A stretch of DNA of 63,889 bases, the filler included, from Octopus bimaculoides (lineage: Eukaryota): NCBI RefSeq assembly GCF_001194135.2. It is 6 parts of 6 records of this genome, joined end to end, with 100 filler letters (N's around TTAATTAATTAA, not from the genome) between each part and the next. Parts side by side here need not be neighbours in the genome. Positions count along the whole stretch, not along the records: positions 3,206 to 27,549 come from NW_026329821.1; 5 more parts are not named here. The stretch is one strand, 5' to 3'. A program made the position numbers and the translations under genes. Below are positions 3,106 through 26,960 of this stretch, piece by piece (position 1 is the first letter of the stretch; each line of letters begins with the position of its first letter). The notes under the pieces are model-generated. The model searched no databases and had not been told where the DNA came from. It saw only the letters and a program-made list of their open reading frames with translations.

Positions 3106-3205
3106 NNNNNNNNNNNNNNNNNNNNNNNNNNNNNNNNNNNNNNNNNNNNTTAATTAATTAANNNNNNNNNNNNNNNNNNNNNNNNNNNNNNNNNNNNNNN
3201 NNNNN
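3106..3205. other. Artificial scaffold spacer (44 N + TTAATTAATTAA + 44 N)
   Basis: Linker at 3150-3161 has stops in all six frames; identical 100-bp layout recurs four more times. Confidence 0.95.
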
Positions 3206-3642
3206 ACCCCTTGACCATAATGGCCCATGTAGATCTTCTCTTCGCTGTTTAAGGACTTGAGCAAACTTCCCAGTTCCTGGCCCTTTATAAACGCGTCGTC
3301 GTCAGCACGGATGAAATATTCGTATTTATCGGCATGGTTCTCGTGTAGATACTTCAGCATCTCGAATACTTTGCCCTGAGGCGGGTAGACGTTGTCTGGT
3401 ACGCGATTCAGCCTCACTAAGGGCATCCCGGGAGGGGCCGGGTCTGTGGTGTTGCCGACGAAGAAGACCACATCGCCAGGGATCGATTTCAGCCACGTCA
3501 TTCGGATGGCCCAGTCTCGGGTTTCGAAGTACTGCGAACTCGTCATGACGCCGACCAGAACAAGTTTTTTCTTGGGACCCGGATTGAATTGGAAATCTCC
3601 GAGTTCTTCGAGGAAAGGCTCAATCGGGACCTTTGCGATATT
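3206..3642 (-). CDS. Chondroitin sulfate synthase-like gene A, GT31/Fringe-like exon, truncated by spacer
   Basis: Acceptor TCTTTCAG|AAT at 3642, phase 0. Translation includes LVLVGVMTSSQYFETR, TWLKSIPGDVVFF, DNVYPPQGKVFEMLKYLHE, KYEYFIRADDDAFIKG and IYMGHYGQG, collinear with the remembered CHSY1 N-domain (FVGVMTAQKYLQTR...YPPQKK...WFMRADDDVYIKG). Confidence 0.92.
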
Positions 3643-3749
3643 CTGAAAGAGTACAAGAGGGGAAAAAAAAGTCATTATCGTAGTCAACATCATCATCATC
3701 ATCATCATCATCATTATTGTCATCATCACTACCATCACCATCATCATTG

Positions 3750-3785
<36 letters not shown>

Positions 3786-3931
3786 CCACCACCACCACCA
3801 CTACCTCAATCCTTTCTATATTAACCAAAATGAAGTAGATTGACAAATTTATTTTTTGAACCAGTTGAAGTTACACAAGATGTCGAAATATCGTTCACTA
3901 GATAACATTGGCACTCTTCTTTTAATTTTGA

Positions 3932-5510: not shown

Positions 5511-5967
5511 TTGATTTTGTGTGTTGGAAGTTACGTCTAGACATTTCATATCGAAACATGTGTAGCATATCGACGTTGTCATTTGCATTCCAGCAAATAT
5601 ACTGATAACGAAAACTAAGACATCAGTAATTAATTTTTCTCTTCTCCTCATTTTCTTATTTATGATTTTCTTATTTGTTGGCAATGCATAGGCATCCGTA
5701 AATTTTGACTTGTTATCACAGAAGATATCGCCGGCTTTCCTCTTCGCTATGCTGCCAATGTAAGAATGGGTAAGAAAATAGCTTCTGTTGAGATTGATGT
5801 TGGCGGGGGTGGTGTATCCGACACAGTTGCTGATGTCATCGTTTTTTACACCAGTGTAGTCACTTGGTTGACTGTTAGCTGAAAGTGCTGCAGATATTTC
5901 GTCAGCACCTGCAGGAGATAATGGTGTTACTGTTGTGTCATGTGCTTGACAATGCTGAGAATGGTTC
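5511..5967 (-). CDS. CHSY-like gene A, exon with N-terminal tail and type II signal anchor
   Basis: Donor CAA|GTAAGT at 5511, phase 0, matches the 3642 acceptor. Basic MRRREK then hydrophobic LITDVLVFVISIFAGMQMTT. Frame is open from candidate acceptor TACAG|G at 5967 (phase 2). Internal ATG at 5651 is an alternative start. Confidence 0.75.
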
Positions 5968-7032: not shown

Positions 7033-7210
7033 CGGCTGTGTGTTAAGTAGCTTGCTTACCAACCATGTGGTTCTGGGTTCATTCCCACTGCGTGACACCT
7101 TGGGCAAGTGTCTTCTACTATAGCCTTGGGCTGACCAAACCCTTGTGAGTGGATTTGGTAGACGGAAACTGAAAGAAGCCCGTCGTATATATATATATAT
7201 ATATATATAT
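7033..7210 (+). mobile_element. SINE family A, 5' half
   Basis: GGCTGTGTGTTAAGTAGCTTGCTTACCAACCATGTGGTTCTGGGTTCATTCCCACTGCGTGACACCTTGGGCAAGTGTCTTC, running into (AT)n and a gap. Confidence 0.85.
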
Positions 7211-11518: not shown

Positions 11519-12870
11519 AGCAAGATATTTGGTAGCAGAAATTATTAGACAGAAAAGGAAAAGTCACACAGTTGGTGAGAGCTTAAAACTACCAGCTTGT
11601 AAAATTGTGGTCGGTAAAATGCTTGGGCAATATGCAATACAAGCAATTGAAAATGTTCCACTTATGTTACAATAAGTCAACGCGTTGATGACATGGTACG
11701 TGACATTGAAAAACTTTGGCGTGACAAATTGAAAAATTGAAGTTTTTCTATTCAGACTGATAATTGTTGTGTAGCTTTTGTAAAATTATCAATGTGGTGA
11801 AATTCAAGAAAATTTCCTGTGTTGCAAAGAACTGCCCGAGACAAGCAAAGGAATAGATGTATTCAACATTTTTTTCCCTCATAGCGCAGGAGTGGCTGTG
11901 TGGTAAGTAGCTTGCTTACCAACCACATGGTTCCGGGTTCATTCCCACTGCGTGGCACCTTGGGCAAGTGTCTTCTACTATAGCCTCGGGCCGACCAAAG
12001 CCTTGTGAGTGGATTTGGTAGACGGAAACAGAAAGAAATCTGTCGTATANNNNNNNNNNNNNNNNNNNNNNNNNNNNNNNNNNNNNNNNNNNNNNNNNNN
12101 NNNNNNNNNNNNNNNNNNNNNNNNNNNNNNNNNNNNNNNNNNNNNNNNNNNNNNNNNNNNNNNNNNNNNNNNNNNNNNNNNNNNNNNNNNNNNNNNNNNN
12201 NNNNNNNNNNNNNNNNNNNNNNNNNNNNNNNNNNNNNNNNNNNNNNNNNNNNNNNNNNNNNNNNNNNNNNNNNNNNNNNNNNNNNNNNNNNNNNNNNNNN
12301 NNNNNNNNNNNNNNNNNNNNNNNNNNNNNNNNNNNNNNNNNNNNNNNNNNNNNNNNNNNNNNNNNNNNNNNNNNNNNNNNNNNNNNNNNNNNNNNNNNNN
12401 NNNNNNNNNNNNNNNNNNNNNNNNNNNNNNNNNNNNNNNNNNNNNNNNNNNNNNNNNNNNNNNNNNNNNNNNNNNNNNNNNNNNNNNNNNNNNNTTGTCC
12501 CCCCAACATCGCTTGACAACTGATGCTGGGGTGTTTACGTCCCCGTAACTTAGCGGTTCGGCAAAAGAGACCGATAGAATAAGTACTAGGCATCCAAAGA
12601 ATAAGTCCTTGGGTCGATTTGTTCGACTAAAGGCGGTGCTCCAGCATGGCCACAGTCAAATGACTGAAACAAGTAAAAGAGTAAAAGAGATATCTGGAAA
12701 CAAGAGGTCTCTCCTGGAAGGACTGTATTGGCATTTGTCCAGATGGCGCCCCATCAATGGTTAGCTTCCATAAAAGGTTTTGTTTCTCTTGTAACACAAA
12801 AAAAATCCCAATATAATCTCAACACACTGCTTTATCGTCTCAGAGATTATTACCACAGGAAGTAGCAAAC
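11519..12870 (+). mobile_element. hAT (Buster/Charlie-like) transposase relic split by a SINE A insertion
   Basis: ARYLVAEII..KSHTVGESLKLPAC and ENFLCCKELPETSKGIDVFNI lie before the SINE; YLETRGLSWKDCIGICPDGAPSMV and THCF resume at 12691. Confidence 0.8.
11884..12690 (+). mobile_element. SINE family A, full length, gap at internal microsatellite
   Basis: A-box TGGCTGTGTGG, B-box GGTTCATTCCC, CCTTGGGCAAGTG core, tail CAGTCAAATGACTGAAACAAGTAAAAGAGTAAAAGAG. Confidence 0.9.
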
Positions 12871-13655: not shown

Positions 13656-13778
13656 AAATATACACCGATTGAGGAGGAAGACGTCACAAGCCAAGGCAGA
13701 CTTGATGAGAAAATGGTAGAATTTAACATAAACGTTGGTTTATGTTTTTCATATCAACGTAATAAAGAATGCTGTACT

Positions 13779-14178
13779 ATTTTACTCTTTTACTTGTTTC
13801 AGTCTTTTGACTGTGGCCATGCTGGAGCACCGCCTTTAGTCGAGCAAATCGACTCCAGGACTTATTCTTTGGAAGCCTAGTACTTATTCTATCGGTCTCT
13901 TTTGCCGAACCGCTAAGTCACGGGGACATAAACACACTAGCATCGGTTGTCAAGCGATGTTGGGAGGAGGGGGGGACAAACACACACACACATACATATA
14001 AATATACATATATACGACGGGCTTCTTTCAGTTTCCGTCTACCAAATCCACTCACAAGGCTTTGGTCAGCCCGAGGCTATAGTAGAAGACACTTGCCCAA
14101 GATGCCACGCAGTGGGACTGAATCCGGGACCATGTGGTTGGTAAGCAAGCTACTTACCACACAGCCACTCCTACGCCT
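13779..14178 (-). mobile_element. SINE family A, full length
   Basis: Complete reverse complement from tail (TTTTACTCTTTTACTTGTTTCAGTC) to head (CCACACAGCCACTCCTACGCC). Confidence 0.9.
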
Positions 14179-14389
14179 ATAATTAATTGTAGCTAATTTC
14201 TTTACAAGGTTGATTAGCGATCGCGTCTGTTTAATTAAACCTGTTAAATATCCAGTTTGAAGTAGTTGCGGATTCAGTAAATACAGACATCATACAACAG
14301 CACCGAAAGAACGAAGAAAATTGCAAGGAAAAAGCTCAATGATGGTTAAGGGGTAGTAACTCTAAATACAAACACTTGCTTTACAACTT

Positions 14390-15172
14390 CTCTGGCACTC
14401 CGTCGGTTGCGACGACGTCGAGGGTTCCAGTTGATCCGATCAACGGAACAGCCTATATTTTAAAAATATTCACGATTCCAAATGATAGAACAAGTGGGAG
14501 TTGATGGAATATCATGTTTTCTATTACAATCTGGTTTTGTTTCCACTCATTACTCTACTCTCATTGGTCCATGTAGTTCGACATCCTTCCTTCCTTCCTT
14601 GGAACTCCGTCGCTTAACGACGTCGAGGGTTCCNNNNNNNNNNNNNNNNNNNNNNNNNNNNNNNNNNNNNNNNNNNNNNNNNNNNNNNNNNNNNNNNNNN
14701 NNNNNNNNNNNNNNNNNNNNNNNNNNNNNNNNNNNNNNNNNNNNNNNNNNNNNNNNNNNNNNNNNNNNNNNNNNNNNNNNNNNNNNNNNNNNNNNNNNNN
14801 NNNNNNNNNNNNNNNNNNNNNNNNNNNNNNNNNNNNNNNNNNNNNNNNNNNNNNNNNNNNNNNNNNNNNNNNNNNNNNNNNNNNNNNNNNNNNNNNNNNN
14901 NNNNNNNNNNNNNNNNNNNNNNNNNNNNNNNNNNNNNNNNNNNNNNNNNNNNNNNNNNNNNNNNNNNNNNNNNNNNNNNNNNNNNNNNNNNNNNNNNNNN
15001 NNNNNNNNNNNNNNNNNNNNNNNNNNNNNNNNNNNNNNNCTGAGTACTCCACAGACACGTGTACCCTTAACGTAGTTCTCGGGGATATTCAGCGTGACAC
15101 AGGGTGTGACAAGGCTGACCCCTTTGAATTACAGACACAACAGAATCAGGAAGTAAGAGTGAGAGAAAGTTG
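14390..15172 (-). mobile_element. SINE family B fragments (two 3' ends, one continuing across a gap)
   Basis: GGCACTCCGTCG...GACGTCGAGGGTTCCAG at about 14394 and 14591; body resumes at 15040. Confidence 0.75.
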
Positions 15173-15241
15173 TCTTTCGTCTCGTTCTGTCTCTCCTTCT
15201 CTTACACATACATTATCTTCCAGTTTTTCCATTTATTTCTT

Positions 15242-15313
<72 letters not shown>

Positions 15314-15517
15314 ACTCACTCACTCTTATCGTCTCCTTTCTCTCTCCCTCTCTGCTATCGTCTGCTTTTGATTTCTCTCTCTCCCTCTTTTTCTCTCTCT
15401 CTCTCTCTTGTCACCTTTTCATTTCTCTCTCTCTCCCTCACACTCTTATCGTCTGCTTTTCACTTCTTTCACTCTCTCTCGCTTTCACACATTTTTATCG
15501 TCTGCTTTTCATTGTTT

Positions 15518-15556
<39 letters not shown>

Positions 15557-16299
15557 GCTCTCTTATCGTCTACTTTTGATTTCTCTCTCTCTCTCTCTCT
15601 CTCTCCTAACGAAGTTCTTTATCGCTTGTTTTATACCGCGTCTCCGTCCCTCTCTATCACACACGCACTCTTTCTCTCTCTCTCTCTAATCTCCCTCACT
15701 CTTAAAATAACATATTTCTCTTTATTCATTGACATACACTCTTTCCCACAATCCTCCCCCTACTCTCTCCCCTTATCTCTCTCTCTCTATCTTTCGTTTC
15801 CCTCTTAATCAATCTATCCCCCTCCCTCACAATCTGTCTTTCTCGCAGTACGTTTCACCTCTTCCTCCTCCTTCTCCGTCAGTGACAGCAGCCTCTCTCC
15901 CTCTCCATCTCCCTCTCACACAGCTACGCACACTTACGCTATCAGTAGTCGTCACTCCCTTTCTGTCAATGCTCCTCTCTCTCTATCTCTTTCTTTCTCT
16001 CTTACTCCCTCTTTCCCTCCTCATCGTTTCAAACGCTCTCCCTCTCATATCTATTATCCGCTCTAAAACCACCCTTCCCTTCACACACACACATTTTCTC
16101 TCTATAGCTATAACCCTCTCATTCTCCTACCACCACTCTACGCGCTTATACTCTTTCTCTCTTTCTCTCTCTTTCCAACTCTTACCTCCCCGTCTACGAT
16201 TTACCTACACGCCTCTTCCTCTCCCTCTTTGAAAGCCACGTATACACTATATACCTCTTTTTCTCACACCTTCTCTACACCCGCTTTACTCCCTCCCTT

Positions 16300-16363
<64 letters not shown>

Positions 16364-16730
16364 ACCTTCGATATCCCGGTTTTATTTCCTCTCTGCGTTT
16401 TCTATATTTCACTTTCTCCTCCCCTTCTCTCTCTCTCTCTTTCTCTCTCCTCTTTTCGTCTGCTTTTCATCTCCGTCACTCTCTCTCTCTCTCTCTCTCC
16501 CTCTCTCTCCCTCTCTCTCTCTCTCTCTATCCCTCTTCCACTACACCTCCTTAACGCCTTCACTCGCAAAGCTAACATATCCTCTTCTTCTCCGTCCCTA
16601 CAACAGCTATACTACCTCCCTCTCTCCCTCTCTCTCTCCCTATCTCTCTCCGTCACACTCTATCTGTTACACTCTCTCTATCTGTCACACTCTCTCTCTA
16701 TCTGTCACTCTCTCTCTCTATCGCTCTCCC
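15172..16730. repeat. About 1.55 kb CT-rich polypyrimidine tract with recurring CTCTTATCGTCTGCTTTT motif
   Basis: Plus strand is strongly purine-poor, with (CT)n runs interrupted by variants of the same motif. Confidence 0.9.
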
Positions 16731-17039
16731 TTCGATACGCTCAGTCTTCAGGTGTGACAAATATACGAAGCGCCAAGGTGAGTAAAACGCCTTTTTTCTT
16801 GTGTTTATTTTATATCAAACTGAGATTATTTTTTCTTCACTTCGAACCCCTAAACCCGGCACACACACACACACACACATACACACACACACACACATAC
16901 ACGTACATACATACATATATACATATATACATCCGTACATTCCGTTGACGTATGGTAGCTCCTGCAAATCGATTTTTACTTCCGTCGTCAGAAACCGGCT
17001 ACAACAATTAACTATACATCCTTTTATTCTGTTATCCTA

Positions 17040-17458
17040 TTACTTGTTTCAGTCATTTTGACTGCGGCCATGCTGGAGCACCGCCCCCCAGTCGAACAAA
17101 TCGACCCCTGGACTTATTCTTAGTAAGCCTAGCGCTTATTCTATCGGTCTGTTTGGCCGAACCGCTTGACTACGAGTCCGTAAACACACCAGCATCAGTT
17201 GTCAAGCGATGGTGGGGGACAAACACACACACACAAATACACACACACGCACACATACACACACATATATATATATATACATTTATATATATATATAGAC
17301 AGGCTTCTTTCAGTTTCTGTTTACCAAATCCACTCACAAGGCTCTGGTTGGCCCGAGGCCATAGTAGAAGACACTTGCCCAAGGTGTCACGCAGTGAGAC
17401 AACCTGGAACCATGTGGTTAGTAAGCAAGCTTCTTACCACACAGCCACTCTTGCGCCT
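17040..17458 (-). mobile_element. SINE family A, full length
   Basis: Reverse complement of tail, internal (CA)/(TA) tract and head (CCACACAGCCACTCTTGCGCC). Confidence 0.88.
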
Positions 17459-18906: not shown

Positions 18907-19908
18907 CTTCCACACTCGACAGTTTCCAACTTCCACACTCAACTTCCACACATCTCTAGATTCCTTTTCTACTCTTCCACACACGACAATTTCAACATTC
19001 TGCCCCCAACTTTTGCATATTCAAACTTCCTTTCTACTCTTCCACACTCGACAGNNNNNNNNNNNNNNNNNNNNNNNNNNNNNNNNNNNNNNNNNNNNNN
19101 NNNNNNNNNNNNNNNNNNNNNNNNNNNNNNNNNNNNNNNNNNNNNNNNNNNNNNNNNNNNNNNNNNNNNNNNNNNNNNNNNNNNNNNNNNNNNNNNNNNN
19201 NNNNNNNNNNNNNNNNNNNNNNNNNNNNNNNNNNNNNNNNNNNNNNNNNNNNNNNNNNNNNNNNNNNNNNNNNNNNNNNNNNNNNNNNNNNNNNNNNNNN
19301 NNNNNNNNNNNNNNNNNNNNNNNNNNNNNNNNNNNNNNNNNNNNNNNNNNNNNNNNNNNNNNNNNNNNNNNNNNNNNNNNNNNNNNNNNNNNNNNNNNNN
19401 NNNNNNNNNNNNNNNNNNNNNNNNNNNNNNNNNNNNNNNNNNNNNNNNNNNNNNNNNNNNNNNNNNNNNNNNNNNNNNNNNNNNNNNNNNNNNNNNNNNN
19501 NNNNNNNNNNNNNNNNNNNNNNNNNNNNNNNNNNNNNNNNNNNNNNNNNNNNNNNNNNNNNNNNNNNNNNNNNNNNNNNNNNNNNNNNNNNNNNNNNNNN
19601 NNNNNNNNNNNNNNNNNNNNNNNNNNNNNNNNNNNNNNNNNNNNNNNNNNNNNNNNNNNNNNNNNNNNNNNNNNNNNNNNNNNNNNNNNNNNNNNNNNNN
19701 NNNNNNNNNNNNNNNNNNNNNNNNNNNNNNNNNNNNNNNNNNNNNNNNNNNNNNNNNNNNNNNNNNNNNNNNNNNNNNNNNNNNNNNNNNNNNNNNNNNN
19801 NNNNNNNNNNNNNNNNNNNNNNNNNNNNNNNNNNNNNNNNNNNNNNNNNNNNNNNNNNNNNNNNNNNNNNNNNNNNNNNNNNNNNNNNNNNNNNNNNNNN
19901 NNNNNNNT

Positions 19909-20841
19909 TTCAGCCTGTCCCGCAACAGCTGGTGGCAGAAAGAGCAGAGTGTGAGGCGGACGAAGACGGGGCAGTCGTCAAGAAGAGGGGCCGGCGGTGG
20001 GGGACCCATTCCAGCTCCCCCACCCGACCCGCCGGCCCCGAAGCCACTCTTTGACCACGTCATAATGCATTTCGTCGACTCGAGCCTGTACAGGGAGAAG
20101 AAACGAAGTTTTGTACCCCCGCTGTGGTCGTCAGAGAACGAGGCACACAAGGGTGAAGGCGGTGGCAGCGCCAAAAGCACTACAACAAATGACATGGAGG
20201 AGTCTGAAGTTGTGGTGGCCATGGATGGGTTGGTGAGGTCATCGGTGAATGAGGGTTTCGAGAAAGTACTTCGGTTGCTGGTTGCGAATGATAGTGGAAT
20301 CCGTATGTCTGAACATGGATATATCTTCGTTGCAGGCGATGTCTTGTTGGACGAGACAACGTTCTATAACCTCGTCAATTATGTACAGATCAAAAGCATG
20401 TCAAAAACGACGGCGCGAACTGTCAACACAAACGAGAAAAATGTCAAAAGGCAGCTGTTGTTCAACGGTGGTGACGGTGGTACTGGCGGACGAGCAGCTT
20501 TCAGATCGTCAATGGCCATGGCACAAACGTGGGACGATGGGAAGAACTGTACTCACCACCGTCGTCATCACGAATCTCCTCGTTATCGGCCGGGCGCAAA
20601 TGTCAAACATGGCAACGACTGTGAGTTCGTCGAAGGAATCGTAGTGACACCTGACAAACTGGACGAGTTCAGGAGACAACGCACGGCTGTCAACTGCGGT
20701 AGCAGCTCCGATGGACAGACGAGAAGATGCAAGACAAAGCAGGCCGAAGGCAGGTTCGCAGATTCAGACACAGGAGGAGCCACGAGTTCTCACTTCTACC
20801 TTGCGGACGCTTCTTATGTCCAGTGTTTCTTCAACTCAAAG
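19909..20841 (+). CDS. CHSY-like gene B, exon encoding a degenerate GT31-like domain
   Basis: Open for about 310 codons and GC-rich. Donor AAG|GTAAAA at 20841, phase 0, matches the 24508 acceptor. Weak collinear similarity to the CHSY N-domain: YIFVAGDVLL at WFMRADDDVYI, EFVEGIVVT at FCMGGPGVIMS, ADASYVQCF at HEDVEVGRCV. The 5' boundary is either TTCAG|C at 19914 or lies in the preceding gap. Confidence 0.75.
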
Positions 20842-20869
20842 GTAAAAACGCATCTTTTGGTAGCTCCTT

Positions 20870-21195
20870 TATTCTTCTTCTTTTTCTTCTTCTTCTTCTT
20901 TGTCTTCTTCTTCTCTTCCTTGCCTCCCTCTTCTTCTTCTTCTTCTTCTTCTCATTTTCCTTCTTCTTTTCCTTCTTCTCCTTCTTCTTCTTCTTCTTCT
21001 TTTTTTCCTTCTTCTTCTTCTTCTTCTTCTTCTTCTTTTCCTTCTTCTTTCCCTTCTTCTTCTTCTTCTTTTCCTTCTTCTTCTTCTTCTTCTTCTTCTT
21101 TTCCTTCTTCTTCTTCTTCTTCTTCTTCTTCTTCTTCTTCTTCTTCTTCTTCTTCTCTTCCTTGCCTCCCTCTTCTTCTTCTTCTTCTTCTTCTC
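20870..21195. repeat. Interrupted (TTC)n tract
   Basis: About 320 bp of TTC with TTT/TCC interruptions, starting about 30 nt after the donor. Confidence 0.95.
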
Positions 21196-21284
21196 ATTAT
21201 ATACATACATAAATAAATATACAGACGCCTACATACACACGCATTCATTCATTCATTCATTCATTCATACATACTTACATACAT

Positions 21285-21320
<36 letters not shown>

Positions 21321-21621
21321 GTGTGTGCATATATATTCATATGCCTTTCTATATTTATTTACAGAGCCTATTTTAGAGGTGACTGGTGCGACGTGGCAGC
21401 CAATGCGTCTTTCGTTTTCTTCTCCAACAGTCTGTTATAAATCAAAGGAGATTTAGTTGTTATTTTTCGCAGATCAAGTAACCTACCACCACCAACACCA
21501 GCACCACACCCTGTCATGAGAAATTTACTATGGATTACGTGGACTGGCCTATTCATGAATAATTGCATAGAAAAACATTATTGTTTTCTATATAATATAT
21601 TTATACGTACACACTCTATCC

Positions 21622-21664
<43 letters not shown>

Positions 21665-22519
21665 NNNNNNNNNNNNNNNNNNNNNNNNNNNNNNNNNNNN
21701 NNNNNNNNNNNNNNNNNNNNNNNNNNNNNNNNNNNNNNNNNNNNNNNNNNNNNNNNNNNNNNNNNNNNNNNNNNNNNNNNNNNNNNNNNNNNNNNNNNNN
21801 NNNNNNNNNNNNNNNNNNNNNNNNNNNNNNNNNNNNNNNNNNNNNNNNNNNNNNNNNNNNNNNNNNNNNNNNNNNNNNNNNNNNNNNNNNNNNNNNNNNN
21901 NNNNNNNNNNNNNNNNNNNNNNNNNNNNNNNNNNNNNNNNNNNNNNNNNNNNNNNNNNNNNNNNNNNNNNNNNNNNNNNNNNNNNNNNNNNNNNNNNNNN
22001 NNNNNNNNNNNNNNNNNNNNNNNNNNNNNNNNNNNNNNNNNNNNNNNNNNNNNNNNNNNNNNNNNNNNNNNNNNNNNNNNNNNNNNNNNNNNNNNNNNNN
22101 NNNNNNNNNNNNNNNNNNNNNNNNNNNNNNNNNNNNNNNNNNNNNNNNNNNNNNNNNNNNNNNNNNNNNNNNNNNNNNNNNNNNNNNNNNNNNNNNNNNN
22201 NNNNNNNNNNNNNNNNNNNNNNNNNNNNNNNNNNNNNNNNNNNNNNNNNNNNNNNNNNNNNNNNNNNNNNNNNNNNNNNNNNNNNNNNNNNNNNNNNNNN
22301 NNNNNNNNNNNNNNNNNNNNNNNNNNNNNNNNNNNNNNNNNNNNNNNNNNNNNNNNNNNNNNNNNNNNNNNNNNNNNNNNNNNNNNNNNNNNNNNNNNNN
22401 NNNNNNNNNNNNNNNNNNNNNNNNNNNNNNNNNNNNNNNNNNNNNNNNNNNNNNNNNNNNNNNNNNNNNNNNNNNNNNNNNNNNNNNNNNNNNNNNNNNN
22501 NNNNNNNNNNNNNNNNNNN

Positions 22520-22561
<42 letters not shown>

Positions 22562-23526
22562 TCGGTGGCCACATAGACTCTTGAGCTAGAAATAAAAATC
22601 CCAAATTTCTTATATTCCCTCTCTATCAATGTAAAGACAGAAACGCTACACAAGAAAGAATCAACATGGAGAATCTTTTTTATTGAAAAATTCCAAACAC
22701 TTCTTAATATATAAACTCCACGGGGACTATATTCTTTTTTCTAACCTACCTCATTAAATCTTAGAACAGACAAAAGCATCCTGCTTACAAAGAATCCAGC
22801 ATTCAAATTAAAGAGTACGAAACTCACAGAATTATCTTCCCTTATCCACAGTAACTTTATAATCCCTTCCCTATTTCCAATTTGACGCATAAACATCCAG
22901 CCTTTTTGAAACAAAAAACACTACACAGAAACACATGCATCCTAACCCTTCCAACAATTTTTTCCAAGGAAAACCAGTGATCGTTAAAAGTTTAAAGACA
23001 CTATGATGTATTGGTATATTTATTTTTTTATACATTTTTTTTTTTTTTTTAAACATTTTTTACCTCCTTTCCATTTATATTAAATTATGCTTTCAGTTTA
23101 GCATTCATCATCATCATCGTCGTTGTCAAGCAATAGTGGGGGTACAAACACAGACACACACAAATATACACATATACACGACAATCTTCTTTCAGTTTCC
23201 GTGTACGAAATCCACTCCCAAGGTTTTGTCTGAAATTATAAAGTGTTTCCCCATAATGAAACTAATTGAAATTGAAACCATATAATAGTGAAACAATTAT
23301 ATCACCTTACAACAGACGTATGATTGTTTAACTTTGGACATGTAATACCGAAACGGTGTAAATGATTGCTCCAGGCTTGCATTGCGCTAGACTGAAAATT
23401 TGTTTGGCCCATGACAACCCATACAACCTAAGTAACGTATATATGCAATTTGAATAAAATCGGTTGGGTAGTTCTCGAATTTCAGAGATGTATATCTATA
23501 TATATACATGTATATACATACATATA

Positions 23527-23800
23527 TGTAGGCGCAGGAGTGGCTGTGTGGTAAGAAGCTTGCTTCCAAACCATATGGTTTCGGGTTGAGTCACACTGCG
23601 TGGCACCTTGGGCAAGTGTCTTCTACTATAGCCTCAGGCAGACCAAGGCCTTGTGAGTGGATTTGGTAGATGGAAACTGAGAGAAACCCGTCGTTTATGT
23701 GTATATATATATATGTGTGTGTGTGTGTATACATGTATAAATATATACTCTTTTACTTTTTCGGTCATTTGACTGTGGCCATGCTGGAGCACCGCCTTTA
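23527..23800. mobile_element. SINE A 5' half (plus) followed by a SINE A tail fragment (minus)
   Basis: Head at 23530; TCATTTGACTGTGGCCATGCTGGAGCACC at about 23765. Confidence 0.75.
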
Positions 23801-24189
23801 AAAAAATTATATATATATATGCATATATACAAACATATATGTACATACCGTCACACTGTATCACGCTGAATTTGTTTGTTCTCTGATAAATGTTTTTTTT
23901 ATATACATAGATGGATATGTGTTTGTGTGTGTGTATATATGTGTGTCTACATATATATGTATATATATATATATATATATNNNNNNNNNNNNNNNNNNNN
24001 NNNNNNNNNNNNNNNNNNNNNNNNNNNNNNNNNNNNNNNNNNNNNNNNNNNNNNNNNNNNNNNNNNNNNNNNNNNNNNNNNNNNNNNNNNNNNNNNNNNN
24101 NNGGCTCCTTGCTGTGCTCAAGAAGACTCGTGTTTCTCATAGAATTGTTAAAGCTACGTCCTCTGGTGGAGAGGATTGATCTGGGAATT

Positions 24190-24421
24190 CTTGTGTCGGT
24201 GCCACGAAAAGACACTCATGCCAGTGACTTGTAATAAGACTCATGTTGGTGCCACCTGAAAAGCACCTGGCACACATTGTAAAGTGGTTGGTGTTAGGAA
24301 GGGCATCCAGCCGTAGGGACCAAGTTAAATCAGACTGGAACCTAGTGCTGCCCCCTTGCTTTCTAACCCCTGTCGAACCATCTAACCCATGCCAACATGG
24401 AAAACGGACGTTAAAGGATGG

Positions 24422-24452
<31 letters not shown>

Positions 24453-24460
24453 AATGATGA
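24190..24460 (+). mobile_element. Family D retroposon 3' end
   Basis: GTGGTTGGTGTTAGGAAGGGCATCCAGCCGTAG...CATGGAAAACGGACGTTAAA plus (GAT)n. Confidence 0.75.
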
Positions 24461-24507
24461 AATGTCTTTTTTTATTCTTGTTAATTGTCTTCTTCCTCTA
24501 ATTACAG

Positions 24508-26106
24508 GTGAATGGTCAACGAGACATAGGACACACCTGCCAATGGAAAGAATCTCTGGGAAATCGTCAGATGGAAAACCTGAAGTTGACGGATGTGATA
24601 TCCCGCCAGGGTCCTCGACCTGCTTTCCAAGAACTCTATTTGTACTTCAAACAACAACATCTGCGGGAACTAATGTCAAGGAGTGCCTATCTACGCTCCG
24701 AAGTGTTTGCCACGAGTAAAATGGTTTCATTCTTAACTCATGGCAAGTCTCTTAGATACGACTATCAGAAACAGTTTGACACCTGGAACCGATATTGGAG
24801 CAGAAATCAGACAGCAGCTGTATCTGAAAGCTTTCTGGATGACGATACCCATTGGAAGTACACAAACGACCGCTACATCTACACAACCTATAACATACAT
24901 AAATCACCAGTGCAGAAATTGTTTTTCAAAGGCACTTTGAGACTTCTAGAGGATTCTTTGAATAATTTGTTTCACGAACTGAATTTCATGTCTCCTTTTC
25001 TGGAGAGCGTCAAGTTCCATCACTCTTACCAACACTTCTCACCGCTGTTCGGAGTGTGGCATTTTGTGAATGTTATCGCCTCCAGCAGTAACATGACGGT
25101 AAGTAAAAACACCACCACCAACAACAACAACAACAACAACAACAACAGCAGTGACAGGGGTAGGAACATTATGGCAGCAGTGACGGACAGGAAACTAGCC
25201 AATTTGATGTTTTTGACAGCTGAAAAATTCCGTCAACTTCAAGTGACCGAGTTCTCGAACTGGAGCGATCAGACATTTTTTTCATCGTCCTCATCATATT
25301 CATCATCATTGACCAGTGAACACATCAGCATTATAGTACCGGTGGCTGGACGAGATGACGCTTTTAACCGTTTCCATGCAATGTTACGCCCAGTTCTTGC
25401 CAACGACACAAACATCAGTTTCATATTCATCATATTTATTCAGGCAGGAAACAACGACAAAATAACGTTCATCAACCAACTACAATTGGAGTATCCGCAT
25501 GTTTCTATCCGCTCGGTGTTTAGAAGAACGACGTTTTCCCGAGCCGAAGCCCTGCAGATCGGAGTCAGTCTTGTCGAGCATGACGACGTCATCTTGTCGT
25601 TCATGGACATCGATATGGTGTTCACGAGTTCGTTTCTCGCCCGTGTCAGACAATTCACGGTCAGGCACCAGCGAGCGTATTTCCCAATCTACTTCAGTCA
25701 ATACGCGTCAGCCGACAAATGCGATCCGAGGTACCCTGCCCTGTGCGCCCCATTTCGCTTCCGACCCGACGACGGCTTCTGGCGCTTCTACGGTTACGGT
25801 ATGGCGTCCATTTACAAAAGTGACTTCCTGTCGGTGGGGGGTTATGATCTAAAGATCAAGGGCTGGGGGTTGGAAGATTTGAAATTGTATGAAACTTGCA
25901 TCAATAAAAACATGGAGGTGTTTCGAGCACCGGACCCAGGACTTGTACATATCTACCACAGCAAGAGCTGTTCCCCTTCGTTAGCAGCCAATCAGTACAG
26001 CATGTGCCAGGAAACCAAATTCAGTATTTACCTGCATGAACACACTTCAGCTGAACTGGTCTACGGAGAGCAGGAGTTGATAGATCGAACCCCACCGTGG
26101 AAATAA
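24508..26106 (+). CDS. CHSY-like gene B, terminal exon with an intact GT7/CHGN GalNAc-transferase domain
   Basis: Acceptor ATTACAG|GTG, phase 0; 532 codons to TAA. Motifs IIVPVAGR, FSRAEAL, FMDIDMVF (DxD), YFPIYFSQY, GFWRFYGYG, GGYDLKIKGWGLED and FRAPDPGLVHIYH match CHSY/CSGalNAcT. Confidence 0.95.
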   Translation: MNGQRDIGHTCQWKESLGNRQMENLKLTDVISRQGPRPAFQELYLYFKQQHLRELMSRSAYLRSEVFATSKMVSFLTHGKSLRYDYQKQFDTWNRYWSRNQTAAVSESFLDDDTHWKYTNDRYIYTTYNIHKSPVQKLFFKGTLRLLEDSLNNLFHELNFMSPFLESVKFHHSYQHFSPLFGVWHFVNVIASSSNMTVSKNTTTNNNNNNNNNSSDRGRNIMAAVTDRKLANLMFLTAEKFRQLQVTEFSNWSDQTFFSSSSSYSSSLTSEHISIIVPVAGRDDAFNRFHAMLRPVLANDTNISFIFIIFIQAGNNDKITFINQLQLEYPHVSIRSVFRRTTFSRAEALQIGVSLVEHDDVILSFMDIDMVFTSSFLARVRQFTVRHQRAYFPIYFSQYASADKCDPRYPALCAPFRFRPDDGFWRFYGYGMASIYKSDFLSVGGYDLKIKGWGLEDLKLYETCINKNMEVFRAPDPGLVHIYHSKSCSPSLAANQYSMCQETKFSIYLHEHTSAELVYGEQELIDRTPPWK

Positions 26107-26141: not shown

Positions 26142-26960
26142 ATTGAATTGTGGCCATGCTGGGGCATCGCTTTGAAGGGATTTAGCAAAAAGAAAAAATC
26201 AATTCCCAGTTCTTCGTTTCCTTTCTTTTTGTTTTATTCTATCAGTTCCCTTTTGCTGAACAGCAAGGTCGTGCAGACAAGAGTGTTCTACTATATCCTG
26301 AGGCCAACCAAAGCCTTGTGAGTGGATTTGGTCGGCTGAAACTGAAAGAAACCTGTCATATATATATGTGTNNNNNNNNNNNNNNNNNNNNNNNNNNNNN
26401 NNNNNNNNNNNNNNNNNNNNNNNNNNNNNNNNNNNNNNNNNNNNNNNNNNNNNNNNNNNNNNNNNNNNNNNNNNNNNNNNNNNNNNNNNNNNNNNNNNNN
26501 NNNNNNNNNNNNNNNNNNNNNNNNATTGAATTGTGGCCATGCTGGGGCATCGCTTTGAAGGGATTTAGCAAAAAGAAAAAATCAATTCCCAGTTCTTCGT
26601 TTCCTTTCTTTTTGTTTTATTCTATCAGTTCCCTTTTGCTGAACAGCAAGGTCGTGCAGACAAGAGTGTTCTACTATATCCTGAGGCCAACCAAAGCCTT
26701 GTGAGTGGATTTGGTAGACGGAAACTGAAAGAAGCCTGTCGTATATATGTATATATATATGTATGTATATGTATGTGTTTGTGTGTCTGTGTTTGTCCCC
26801 CAACATCACTTGACAACTGATGCTGGTGTGTTTACGTCCCCGTAACTTAGCGGTTCGGCAAAAGAGACCGATAGAATAAGTACTTATATATATATATATA
26901 AGTACTGGGATCGATTTTTTTAACTAAAATTGTCCATTGTTATGCTCCAGCATGGCCACA
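26142..26960. repeat. Near-identical direct duplication across a gap, built from inverted SINE A pieces
   Basis: 26142-26351 is repeated from 26525 with a few differences near the first copy's gap-adjacent end. Each unit is a minus-strand SINE A tail joined to a plus-strand SINE A body; the second continues to a plus tail. Confidence 0.8.

What the first reader, a model, noticed from the sequence alone, without database searches (positions are those of the whole stretch)
19909..26106. CHSY-B: apparently dead GT31 half fused to an intact GalNAc-transferase half
Seen: the C-half keeps DID and GWGLED. Where CHSY1 has RADDDVY the N-half reads FVAGDVL, where it has HEDVEVGRC it reads LADASYVQC, and G/P/S-rich insertions break the domain. 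The linker QELYLYFKQQHLRELMSRSAYLRSEV aligns with the remembered YRLHSYMLSRKISELRHRTIQLHREI. Established: CHPF lacks the C-terminal DxD, and CSGalNAcT has no GT31 domain. Inference: this is a third architecture, a GalNAcT-only CHSY with a pseudo-enzyme domain that may act as scaffold. The N-half alignment is by eye and weak.
Basis: partly seen in the sequence, partly recalled or inferred. Interest (0 to 1): 0.8.

Follow-up and report, generated by a model that had tools for sequence, protein, structure and literature searches.

The report
Octopus half-dead chondroitin synthase paralogue
This is a real two-exon octopus gene, a copy of the neighbouring normal chondroitin synthase gene, that keeps every catalytic residue of its GalNAc-adding half but has lost most of those of its glucuronic-acid-adding half; it is a modestly interesting lineage-specific variant of a known enzyme family.

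Summary
The window piece is Octopus bimaculoides. The finding is a two-exon gene. Exon 1 runs to 20841 and its 5' end is lost in the gap 19055-19907. Exon 2 is 24508-26106. NCBI already annotates it, with the same junction, as "chondroitin sulfate synthase 1".

The two gaps inside the finding lie in the intron and do not touch the reading frame.

The C-half is an intact CHGN/GT7 domain. All nine donor-binding and metal-binding residues defined in human CHSY3 are kept.

The N-half has no Pfam hit and lacks most GT31 catalytic residues. It is collinear with the GT31 half and shares its intron position. It shows weak but significant homology through a bridging relative (P0004). It is under purifying selection (dN/dS about 0.2-0.3).

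The LADASYVQC/HEDVEVGRC match is mis-registered.

The canonical CHSY gene lies head-to-head about 14 kb away in the same piece. A tree puts the gene as sister to cephalopod canonical CHSY, so it looks like a local duplicate.

It is not unique: other CHSY-like proteins with a degenerate GT31 half and an intact GT7 half exist (for example in Lottia). EXTL3 is the known analogue in heparan sulfate synthesis. No activity was tested.

The parts
19909..20841 (+). CHSY-B exon 1, visible part (311 codons). It is a degenerate GT31-like half. Its 5' end (about 145 codons with the start codon and membrane anchor) is lost in the gap 19055-19907.
   Evidence: Open frame running out of the gap. 85% nucleotide identity to O. 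sinensis L001 9684-10838. The O. sinensis ORF 9249.. supplies the missing N-terminus with the TM segment. No Pfam hit. dN/dS 0.19-0.29.
20326..20346 (+). FVAGDVL, the counterpart of the GT31 DxD motif RADDDVY (D261->A, D262->G, D263 kept).
   Evidence: MAFFT alignments. P0004/P0170 have TINNVQL/TTNNVQL at the position that HMMER aligns to RaDDDvy. phmmer aligns the octopus and P0004 segments.
20455..20619 (+). 55-residue octopus-specific insertion (GGDGGTGG...HHRRHH...) in the loop between GT31 strands.
   Evidence: Absent from P0004 and from all canonical CHSY sequences. Kept in O. sinensis with a 5-residue deletion.
20701..20730 (+). SSSDGQTRRC, the most likely counterpart of the xED...GRC motif (HEDVEVGRC). 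E341->S; the Asp may be kept.
   Evidence: E-INS-i alignment. The register is fixed by the intron-anchored second Cys.
20800..20826 (+). LADASYVQC.
   Evidence: C-x5-|V spacing to the exon end is shared with P0004 (FECVESPK|V) and Sepia-type CHSY (EQCKSNRK|V).
20842..24507 (+). Intron (phase 0, GT...AG). It contains both assembly gaps of the finding (21665-22519, 23981-24102), microsatellites and an interspersed repeat copy.
   Evidence: Splice sites. Same junction in NCBI models P0001 and P0002. The intron is 17.5 kb in O. sinensis. Same intron position in the genomic locus L003 of the P0003/P0004 lineage.
24508..26106 (+). CHSY-B exon 2 (532 codons plus stop): end of the GT31-like region, bridging helix, cystatin-like region and intact GT7/CHGN GalNAc-transferase domain.
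   Evidence: Pfam CHGN 2.8e-72 and Glyco_transf_7C 4.8e-11. CHSY3 chains 9q8z_B/9o4g_A 8e-46. AF2 pLDDT 80-95 for residues 530-740 of P0001. Foldseek top hits are CHSY3. dN/dS 0.167.
24628..24705 (+).
   Evidence: AF2 helix H297-337 of P0001. Aligns to the helix after TLHPxK in canonical CHSY. Role described in PMC13389171.
25330..25353 (+). IIVPVAGR: the GT7 residues equivalent to CHSY3 P626 and R630.
   Evidence: Alignment to 9o4g_A. Residue table.
25600..25623 (+). FMDIDMVF: the GT7 DxD motif (CHSY3 D718/D720), intact.
   Evidence: Invariant in all 36 aligned family members.
25861..25878 (+). GWGLED: the GT7 xED motif (CHSY3 E806/D807), intact. The next-but-one residue, D809, is Lys.
25945..25971 (+). 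VHIYHSKSC: the GT7 C-terminal His pair (CHSY3 H831/H834), intact.
3205..3647 (-). Exon of the canonical octopus CHSY ('CHSY-A') with intact ...YFIRADDDAFIKG.... It runs off the left edge of the piece. It is the head-to-head neighbour and presumed parent of CHSY-B.
   Evidence: tblastn 74-78% identity to cephalopod CHSY P0178/P0203. Pfam Fringe 2.5e-6. Acceptor ...TTTCAG|AAT.
5553..5741 (-). Upstream exon of CHSY-A that encodes its membrane anchor.
   Evidence: tblastn to P0178 residues 16-84 (7e-13) and to P0203 residues 17-64. Translation ...KLITDVLVFVISIFAGMQMTTSICY....

Best explanation
CHSY-B is a functional, cephalopod-lineage paralogue of chondroitin sulfate synthase. It arose by local inverted duplication of the canonical CHSY gene that still lies head-to-head about 14 kb away.

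It keeps the family's layout: type-II membrane anchor, GT31-like domain, bridging helix, cystatin-like region, GT7 domain.

The GT31 (beta1,3-GlcA-transferase) half has lost the residues that bind Mn2+ and UDP-GlcA, so it is very probably catalytically dead. The GT7 (beta1,4-GalNAc-transferase) half keeps every known donor-binding, metal-binding and catalytic residue.

The most likely working model is a Golgi GalNAc-transferase-only subunit. Its degenerate N-domain, helix and cystatin-like region are retained for folding and for pairing with a catalytically complete partner (CHSY-A) or with CHPF. This makes it the chondroitin counterpart of EXTL3 (dead GT47 + active GT64), and an intermediate between CHSY and the GT31-less CSGALNACT enzymes.

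Shown here: gene structure, domain identities, residue states, selection, neighbourhood and phylogenetic position. Inferred: loss of GlcAT activity, retention of GalNAcT activity, the scaffold and heterodimer role.
For: Gene model
- GT/AG phase-0 junction identical to the NCBI models of two Octopus species.
- The intron position is shared with the P0003/P0004 lineage and with Sepia-type CHSY.
- A 3.3-kb contig from SRR8281681, inferred to be a transcript, carries an uninterrupted 764-aa ORF that joins both halves in the relative P0004.

C-half
- Pfam CHGN 2.8e-72; CHSY3 8e-46 against CHPF 5e-7.
- P626, R630, R697, D718, D720, E806, D807, H831 and H834 are all kept (residues defined in PMC12748766).
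- Confident AF2 GT-A domain, with Foldseek top hits CHSY3.

N-half
- No Pfam hit.
- Residue states: R187F, D231R, Y233S, D261A, D262G, E341S, H394S, K397G.
- Homology chain: octopus N-half vs P0004 N-half at E 2e-7 to 3e-6; P0170/P0004 N-half vs canonical GT31 profile at E 3.5e-7 / 1.4e-4.
- The P0004 AF2 model shows a beta-alpha-beta N-domain (pLDDT 50-74). Foldseek aligns it to CHSY3 over 766 columns.

Selection (O. bimaculoides vs O. sinensis)
- dN/dS 0.167 for the C-half and 0.29 / 0.19 for the N-half.
- dN below dS with Fisher p 5.6e-7 for the N-half.

Origin
- CHSY-A exons with an intact DDD lie at 5741-5553 and 3647-3205 on the minus strand.
- NJ tree of the GT7 domain: B clade 100% bootstrap, sister to cephalopod canonical CHSY at 52%.
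- In an exhaustive search of 1.84 billion representatives, only three clusters score high: octopus B, P0003/P0004 and cephalopod CHSY-A.
Against: - No enzyme activity was or could be tested.
- The AF2 model of the octopus N-half is unstructured (pLDDT below 50 over residues 1-316). The octopus N-half alone is not detected by the GT31 profile.
- hhalign support is weak (P 0.0055, probability 6.6%).
- The P0004 model was built from an alignment dominated by canonical CHSY sequences, so its GT-A-like N-domain is partly circular.
- The sister relation to CHSY-A has only 52% bootstrap, in a distance tree with long branches.
- No octopus transcript was seen. Clusters P0001 and P0002 contain only genome-derived models.
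- The O. sinensis assembly carries a 2-bp indel in exon 1.
- D263 and possibly the xED Asp survive in octopus. D809 of the GT7 half is Lys.
Confidence: 0.6

Rival explanations
1. The protein is a complete pseudo-enzyme scaffold. CHSY-B would play the CHPF role (stabilising CHSY-A) and its GT7 half would also be inactive, despite the conserved motifs.
For: In humans CHSY needs a non-catalytic CHPF partner for folding and activity (PMC12748766, PMC13389171). B keeps the bridging helix. D809 is replaced by Lys/Arg in the B clade. B evolves much faster than A: 41% identity between octopus B and P0004 in the C-half, against 77-82% identity between the two A copies P0203 and P0178.
Against: All nine GT7 key residues and the DxD, xED and HxxH motifs are kept in both B lineages. 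The GT7 half has the lowest dN/dS, 0.167. Real CHPFs have lost these motifs. The D809 position also varies in a canonical sequence (P0009 has Ala).
Confidence: 0.13
2. The gene is a decaying duplicate, that is a pseudogene or a gene on its way to loss. The degenerate N-half would be simply decay.
For: The N-half has no Pfam hit, carries low-complexity insertions and has an unstructured AF2 model. There is a 2-bp frameshift in the O. sinensis assembly. No octopus transcript contigs were found.
Against: Both exons are open in both species. dN/dS is 0.17-0.29, with dN significantly below dS in each half. Both frames around the O. sinensis indel stay open and conserved, as expected of an assembly error. 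The clade persists in a second, distant lineage with full-length ORFs from several runs, on contigs inferred to be transcripts.
Confidence: 0.1
3. The protein is still bifunctional. The N-half would retain GlcA-transferase activity with a non-canonical site (D263 and the possible xED Asp are kept).
For: D263 and an Asp aligned to D342 survive in octopus. The N-half is under purifying selection.
Against: The first DxD Asp, the metal-binding His394 and R187, Y233 and K397 are all replaced. The sister lineage P0004/P0170 has NN at the DxD and K/E at D342, so these positions are not conserved within the clade. D261N/D263N and H394A were the GT31 mutants built for human CHSY3 to test that active site (PMC12748766).
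Confidence: 0.05
4. The gene model is an artefact. The N-half ORF and the CHGN exon would belong to different genes, or an exon would be hidden in the assembly gaps.
For: The scaffold is heavily gapped. There are two gaps in the intron and one in exon 1.
Against: The P0004-type contigs, inferred to be transcripts, read continuously through the junction. The intron position is shared with canonical CHSY. The protein is collinear with CHSY with no missing segment. The same two-exon structure is seen in the gap-free O. sinensis chromosome.
Confidence: 0.03

Closest known systems
CHSY1/CHSY3 (bifunctional chondroitin sulfate synthases; structures 9q8z_B, 9o4g_A)
   Same: Same overall layout: membrane anchor, GT31-like domain, bridging helix, cystatin-like region, GT7. 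Same intron position as cephalopod CHSY. The GT7 half is closest to CHSY3 (8e-46) with all key residues kept. The gene lies next to the canonical CHSY gene and groups with cephalopod CHSY in the tree.
   Different: The GT31 half has lost the DxD (A-G-D), the C-terminal His/Lys and most donor-contact residues. It gives no Fringe Pfam hit. It carries 55-residue and 29-residue insertions. It evolves far faster than the canonical copy.
CHPF/CHPF2 (chondroitin polymerizing factors; 9q8z_A, 9o4g_B)
   Same: A CHSY-family protein with a non-catalytic GT31-like domain, retained together with the dimerisation helix. A possible partner or scaffold role.
   Different: CHPFs have lost the motifs of both domains (PMC12748766, PMC13389171). 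Here the GT7 motifs are complete. Sequence similarity to CHPF is very low (5e-7, 147 residues). CHPF is an ancient, pre-metazoan split (PMC8022947), whereas this gene appears to be a recent cephalopod duplicate of CHSY.
CSGALNACT1/2 (chondroitin GalNAc-transferases, chain initiation)
   Same: Predicted activity profile: GalNAc transfer only. They keep the helix, the cystatin-like region and a functional GT7 domain (PMC13389171).
   Different: CSGALNACTs lack the GT31 domain altogether. CHSY-B keeps a roughly 400-residue degenerate one under selection. In the tree CHSY-B sits inside CHSY, not with the CSGalNAcT-like sequences.
EXTL3 (and EXT2) of heparan sulfate synthesis
   Same: A two-domain GAG glycosyltransferase in which the N-terminal GlcA-transferase-like domain has become non-functional while the C-terminal HexNAc-transferase domain stays active (EXTL3: dead GT47 + active GT64; PMC13389171 discussion).
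   Different: Unrelated GT families (GT47/GT64 against GT31/GT7), so this is an analogy of design, not homology. The EXTL3 activity is experimentally established. The CHSY-B activity is not.
Other CHSY-like proteins with a degenerate GT31 half and an intact GT7 half: Lottia gigantea LOTGIDRAFT_173438 (P0139), P0128, P0144
   Same: The DxD of the GT31 half is replaced (EDQ, TQN, LDS), while the GT7 DxD, xED and HxxH are kept.
   Different: Their N-halves are still recognisable as Fringe/GT31 (Pfam 4e-16 and 6.5e-14; 122-143 bits to the canonical N-half profile). They fall in other branches of the tree. The one-sided degeneration therefore seems to have happened independently.

Membership tests
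Pfam CHGN (PF05679) / GT7 chondroitin GalNAc-transferase domain | Profile match above the gathering score | tested here: met
   244.6 bits against a cutoff of 23, E 2.8e-72, residues 40-506 of exon 2.
Pfam CHGN (PF05679) / GT7 chondroitin GalNAc-transferase domain | DxD, xED and C-terminal His motifs, plus the donor-contact residues P626, R630 and R697 of CHSY3 | tested here: met
   All nine are conserved in O. bimaculoides, O. sinensis, P0004 and P0170. Residue list from PMC12748766.
Pfam CHGN (PF05679) / GT7 chondroitin GalNAc-transferase domain | beta1,4-GalNAc transfer to GlcA | not testable with these tools
   Needs a recombinant enzyme assay.
CHSY (bifunctional chondroitin synthase) | Domain order: TM, GT31, helix, cystatin-like, GT7 | tested here: inconclusive
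   Collinear alignment and shared intron position. The TM segment is seen only in O. sinensis and P0004. The N-domain fold is not predicted for octopus and only moderately for P0004.
CHSY (bifunctional chondroitin synthase) | GT31 DxD motif (D261/D263) plus the metal-binding His394 | tested here: not met
   The states are A-G-D and Ser in octopus, and I/T-N-N in P0004/P0170.
CHSY (bifunctional chondroitin synthase) | GT31/Fringe profile match (PF02434) | tested here: not met
   No Pfam hit at E<=1 for the octopus N-half, P0004 or P0170. Sepia-type CHSY, Lottia P0139, P0144 and the window's CHSY-A exon all do hit.
CHSY (bifunctional chondroitin synthase) | Phylogenetic position inside the CHSY clade | tested here: met
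   In the NJ tree of the GT7 domain the B clade (100%) sits next to cephalopod CHSY (52%), inside the CHSY radiation and away from the CSGalNAcT-like sequences. The score ranking in the exhaustive search agrees. It is only a distance tree.
CHPF (polymerizing factor, pseudo-enzyme) | [quoted passage not shown] | tested here: not met
   The GT7 motifs are intact. In the alignment to human CHPF, CHPF has PDT where this protein has DID, and LES where it has LED.
CHPF (polymerizing factor, pseudo-enzyme) | Closer to CHPF than to CHSY in sequence | tested here: not met
   31.7 bits to CHPF against 160 bits to CHSY3.
CSGALNACT1/2 | Absence of a GT31-like domain | tested here: not met
   A roughly 400-residue N-half homologous to GT31 is retained.

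The most novel reading that the evidence does not exclude
Coleoid cephalopods evolved, by tandem inverted duplication of CHSY, a dedicated GalNAc-only chondroitin enzyme. Its dead GT31 domain is kept as a structural module. This would be an independent, still traceable re-run of the route that produced EXTL3 in heparan sulfate synthesis and perhaps CSGALNACT in chondroitin synthesis. The enzyme would pair with the neighbouring CHSY-A in a heterodimer with two GalNAcT sites and one GlcAT site, and would contribute to the unusual chondroitin sulfates of cephalopod cartilage.
Probability: 0.25. Interest if true: 0.55.

Novelty: new variant of a known kind. Interest (0 to 1): 0.42.

Why it matters
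Recent structures showed that human chondroitin polymerases are heterodimers of a fully active CHSY and a fully dead CHPF. A natural family member that is dead in one domain only, sits next to its intact parent gene, and is still under selection would be useful in three ways.

- It gives a snapshot of how GAG glycosyltransferases turn into pseudo-enzymes one domain at a time.
- It is a natural separation-of-function allele of the GlcAT and GalNAcT halves.
- It is a candidate for lineage-specific tuning of chondroitin synthesis in cephalopods.

The value is comparative and evolutionary. It does not overturn the known mechanism. Similar one-sided degeneration occurs in other invertebrate CHSY-like proteins, and in EXTL3.

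Tried and rejected
1. The search for homologous proteins with a mixed alignment (A3) returned only the two octopus proteins, most likely because low-complexity words filled the candidate list. That search was wasted.
2. hhalign of the four B-type N-halves against ten canonical N-halves found only the membrane anchor. After trimming and with only P0004/P0170, it gave a collinear 213-column alignment, but with P 0.0055 and probability 6.6%. This is too weak to stand alone.
3. The canonical GT31 profile does not detect the octopus N-half directly. Only the chain through P0004 works.
5. CHPF orthology was considered and rejected.
6. A hidden exon in the intron gaps was considered and rejected.
A decapodiform cephalopod is a guess from the tree.
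8. CHSY-A was not found in the 10 kb upstream of the O. sinensis gene. In O. bimaculoides the distance is about 14 kb, so conservation of the neighbourhood is untested.

Full report
**What the sequence is**

The piece 3206-27549 is a heavily gapped scaffold with 13 runs of N and 40% G+C. It comes from Octopus bimaculoides. The C-half ORF is 100% identical to the NCBI protein "chondroitin sulfate synthase 1 [Octopus bimaculoides]" (P0001, 791 aa). It is 88% identical to "chondroitin sulfate synthase 1-like [Octopus sinensis]" (P0002). So the gene is already in the databases under an automatic name. What is new is the reading of its two halves.

**Gene structure and the gap question**

Exon 1 is an open frame that runs out of the gap 19055-19907 and ends at 20841 (CAAAG|GTAAAA). 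Exon 2 starts at 24508 (TTACAG|GTGAAT) and ends with the stop at 26106. The junction is in phase 0. The NCBI models of both octopus species use exactly this junction (FFNSK|VNGQRD).

The two gaps flagged for the finding (21665-22519 and 23981-24102) lie inside this intron. No coding frame crosses them. Nothing is missing from the protein there, for three reasons:
- In O. sinensis the same two exons are separated by a 17.5-kb gap-free intron with no further coding match.
- A relative, P0004, is encoded as an uninterrupted 764-aa ORF on a 3.3-kb contig from run SRR8281681. I infer that this contig is a transcript. Its ORF reads straight through the junction (VESPK-VHRIF).
- The genomic locus of a close relative of P0004 (L003) starts its C-half exon at that very residue.

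The cuttlefish-type canonical CHSY has its exon start at the same place (NRK|VRQLF). So the intron position is inherited from CHSY.

A third gap, 19055-19907, does matter. It removes the 5' end of exon 1. In O. sinensis that part is about 145 codons. It has a start codon, a membrane anchor (STVVWTFIGFVIGLFSLHVLVWV), a poly-Gln stretch and the first strand (LAIVAVHVGE). The full protein is therefore about 990 aa, not 791.

The O. sinensis assembly has a 2-bp insertion in exon 1 relative to O. bimaculoides. The reading frames on both sides stay open and conserved. I therefore take it as an assembly error, although a real frameshift is not excluded.

**The C-half**

Pfam finds CHGN (PF05679, 2.8e-72) and Glyco_transf_7C. 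Against solved structures the best matches are human CHSY3 in the two CHSY3-CHPF complexes (9q8z_B, 9o4g_A; 8e-46). CHPF is far weaker (5e-7).

The CHSY3 structure paper lists the GT7 donor and metal residues: P626, R630, R697, D718, D720, E806, D807, H831, H834 (PMC12748766). All nine are conserved in both octopus species and in P0004/P0170. Only D809 is changed (Lys or Arg), a position that also varies in a canonical sequence (P0009 has Ala).

AF2 predicts this domain with pLDDT 80-95. Foldseek returns CHSY3 first.

**The N-half**

It gives no Pfam hit even at E<=1. The same is true for P0004 and P0170.

Homology to GT31 rests on a chain:
- The octopus N-halves match the P0004-type N-halves in three collinear segments (phmmer on the N-halves alone, E 2e-7 to 3e-6).
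- A profile of ten canonical CHSY N-halves matches P0170 and P0004 over most of the GT31 domain (E 3.5e-7 and 1.4e-4, search space of one).
- In that match FYCFT(I/T)NNVQLD lies on WFmRaDDDvyik, and in the octopus-P0004 match FVAGDVLLDE lies on FTINNVQLDH.

hhalign gives the same collinear alignment, but only with P 0.0055.

The second motif match is wrong. The Cys of LADASYVQC is five residues before the exon end, like the second Cys of the canonical GRC-x8-C pair (EQCKSNRK|V in Sepia-type CHSY, FECVESPK|V in P0004). The likely counterpart of HEDVEVGRC is SSSDGQTRRC (20701-20730), followed by a 29-residue insertion.

With the residues named for CHSY3, octopus B reads: R187F, D231R, Y233S, K238K, D261A, D262G, D263D, E341S, D342D, H394S, K397G. 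P0004/P0170 have I/T-N-N at the DxD and K/E at D342, so the two surviving Asp of octopus are not conserved within the clade. Loss of the first DxD Asp and of His394, which with D263 hold the Mn2+ in CHSY3 (PMC12748766), makes GlcA transfer very unlikely. This is inference.

Fold evidence is mixed:
- The AF2 model of P0001 has pLDDT below 50 for residues 1-316.
- The model of the insertion-free P0004 shows a beta-alpha-beta N-domain at pLDDT 50-74.
- Foldseek aligns that P0004 model to CHSY3 over 766 columns, against 328 for the octopus model.
- The alignment fed to AF2 was dominated by canonical CHSY, so this is supportive but not independent.

**Is it decaying?**

No. Between O. bimaculoides and O. 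sinensis (dS about 0.3-0.36), dN/dS values are:
- 0.167 for exon 2;
- 0.287 for exon 1 downstream of the O. sinensis indel;
- 0.19 for the 60 codons upstream of it.

dN is below dS with Fisher p 1.6e-27 for the C-half and 5.6e-7 for the N-half. The N-half is somewhat less constrained (82% against 88% amino-acid identity). The same holds in the P0004 lineage (91% against 96%).

**Origin**

The same piece carries, on the minus strand, two exons of the canonical octopus CHSY:
- 5741-5553, the membrane anchor;
- 3647-3205, which reads ...LVLVGVMTSSQYFETRDWAIRMTW...VYPPQGKVFEMLKY...YFIRADDDAFIKG... It is 74-78% identical to cephalopod CHSY and hits Pfam Fringe. It runs off the edge of the piece.

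The intact and the half-degenerate genes are therefore head-to-head neighbours, about 14 kb apart.

An exhaustive profile search of 1.84 billion representatives gives only three high-scoring clusters. They are octopus B (1145 bits), P0003/P0004 (912) and P0016 (359). Everything else scores 256 bits or less. P0016 is the cephalopod canonical CHSY: one cluster member is CHSY of Acanthosepion/Sepia pharaonis.

I built a neighbour-joining tree of the GT7 domain (59 sequences, 237 columns, 100 bootstraps). It groups octopus B with P0003/P0004/P0170 at 100%, and puts this clade next to the cephalopod canonical CHSY at 52%.

The simplest reading is a local inverted duplication of CHSY in the cephalopod lineage, followed by fast evolution of the B copy and loss of the GT31 site. 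The source organism of P0004 is unknown, so the age of the duplication is not fixed.

**How it probably works**

In humans, CHSY1/3 carry both active sites. CHPF/CHPF2 have lost the motifs of both domains and act as obligatory partners. The dimer is made by the extended helices and the cystatin-like domains, not by the GT domains (PMC12748766, PMC13389171).

CHSY-B thus has what is needed to pair and to transfer GalNAc, but not to transfer GlcA. I propose a GalNAc-only subunit that pairs with CHSY-A or with CHPF. I put the whole picture at about 0.6.

The rivals are:
- a fully inactive CHPF-like scaffold (0.13);
- a decaying gene (0.10);
- a still bifunctional enzyme (0.05);
- a gene-model artefact (0.03).

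**Comparison with what is known**

- It is not a CHPF. The GT7 motifs are intact, similarity to CHPF is very low, and CHPF split from CHSY before Metazoa (PMC8022947).
- It is not a CSGALNACT, because it keeps the N-domain.
- It fails two defining features of a bifunctional CHSY: the GT31 DxD/His and the Fringe profile.
- By design it resembles EXTL3 (dead GT47, active GT64). PMC13389171 names EXTL3 as an established case of one-sided loss of function in heparan sulfate synthesis.

It is also not alone. Three other CHSY-like proteins combine a GT31 half without DxD with an intact GT7 half, and they sit on other branches of the tree:
- Lottia gigantea LOTGIDRAFT_173438 (EDQ for DDD);
- P0128 (TQN);
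- P0144 (LDS).

Their N-halves are much less degenerate: Lottia P0139 and P0144 still hit Fringe. One-sided degeneration therefore seems recurrent in invertebrate CHSY-like genes. The cephalopod B clade is the extreme case.

**Verdict**

This is a real gene with a real asymmetry between its halves. The functional claim is plausible but untested. It is a new variant of a known kind, of moderate interest (0.42). It is useful for the evolution of pseudo-enzyme domains in GAG polymerases, and it is not a new mechanism.

Noticed in passing
window 3205-3647 (-) and 5553-5741 (-): Two 5' exons of the canonical octopus chondroitin synthase (intact RADDD; Pfam Fringe hit). The gene lies head-to-head with the gene of the finding, about 14 kb away, and runs off the left edge of the piece.
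   Followed up: yes
L001 about 9868 (O. sinensis CM016885.1), equivalent to window about 20095: O. sinensis has a 2-bp insertion in exon 1 relative to O. bimaculoides. This is why its annotated protein starts at MDGLV. Both reading frames stay open and conserved around it, so it is probably an assembly error, but a real frameshift is not excluded.
   Followed up: partly
P0139 (Lottia gigantea LOTGIDRAFT_173438), P0128, P0144 (unnamed transcripts): Other CHSY-like proteins whose GT31 DxD is replaced (EDQ, TQN, LDS) while the GT7 motifs are intact. They sit on other branches of the tree. P0144 matches human CHPF over its whole length better than canonical CHSY does (119 against 87 bits), so P0128/P0144 may be invertebrate CHPF-lineage proteins that still have a GT7 site.
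   Followed up: partly
window 26142-26365 and 26525-26748: A 224-nt direct duplicate (98% identity) in the 3' UTR region, immediately on both sides of the gap 26372-26524. It looks like redundant gap edges from assembly rather than biology.
   Followed up: partly
window 7034-7210, 11881-12049, 12495-12693, 13775-14183, 17013-17458, 23488-23747, 26661-26884: Copies of an interspersed repeat family (about 170-420 nt, 82-95% identity). It is also scattered many times through the O. sinensis locus L001, in both orientations, in intergenic DNA and in the intron.
   Followed up: no
window 20870-21210, about 3650-3800, and 15100-16900: Long simple repeats: a polypyrimidine (TTC/CTT)n tract starting 30 nt after the exon-1 donor; a (CAT)n tract in the CHSY-A intron; and about 1.8 kb of (CT)n-rich sequence that produces long spurious Leu/Ser ORFs.
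   Followed up: no
window 18908-19000 vs L001 6992-7084: The sequence just upstream of the gap 19055-19907 matches O. sinensis about 2.6 kb upstream of the point where exon 1 resumes. The gap (written as 853 N) may therefore be underestimated, unless the match is to a repeat.
   Followed up: no
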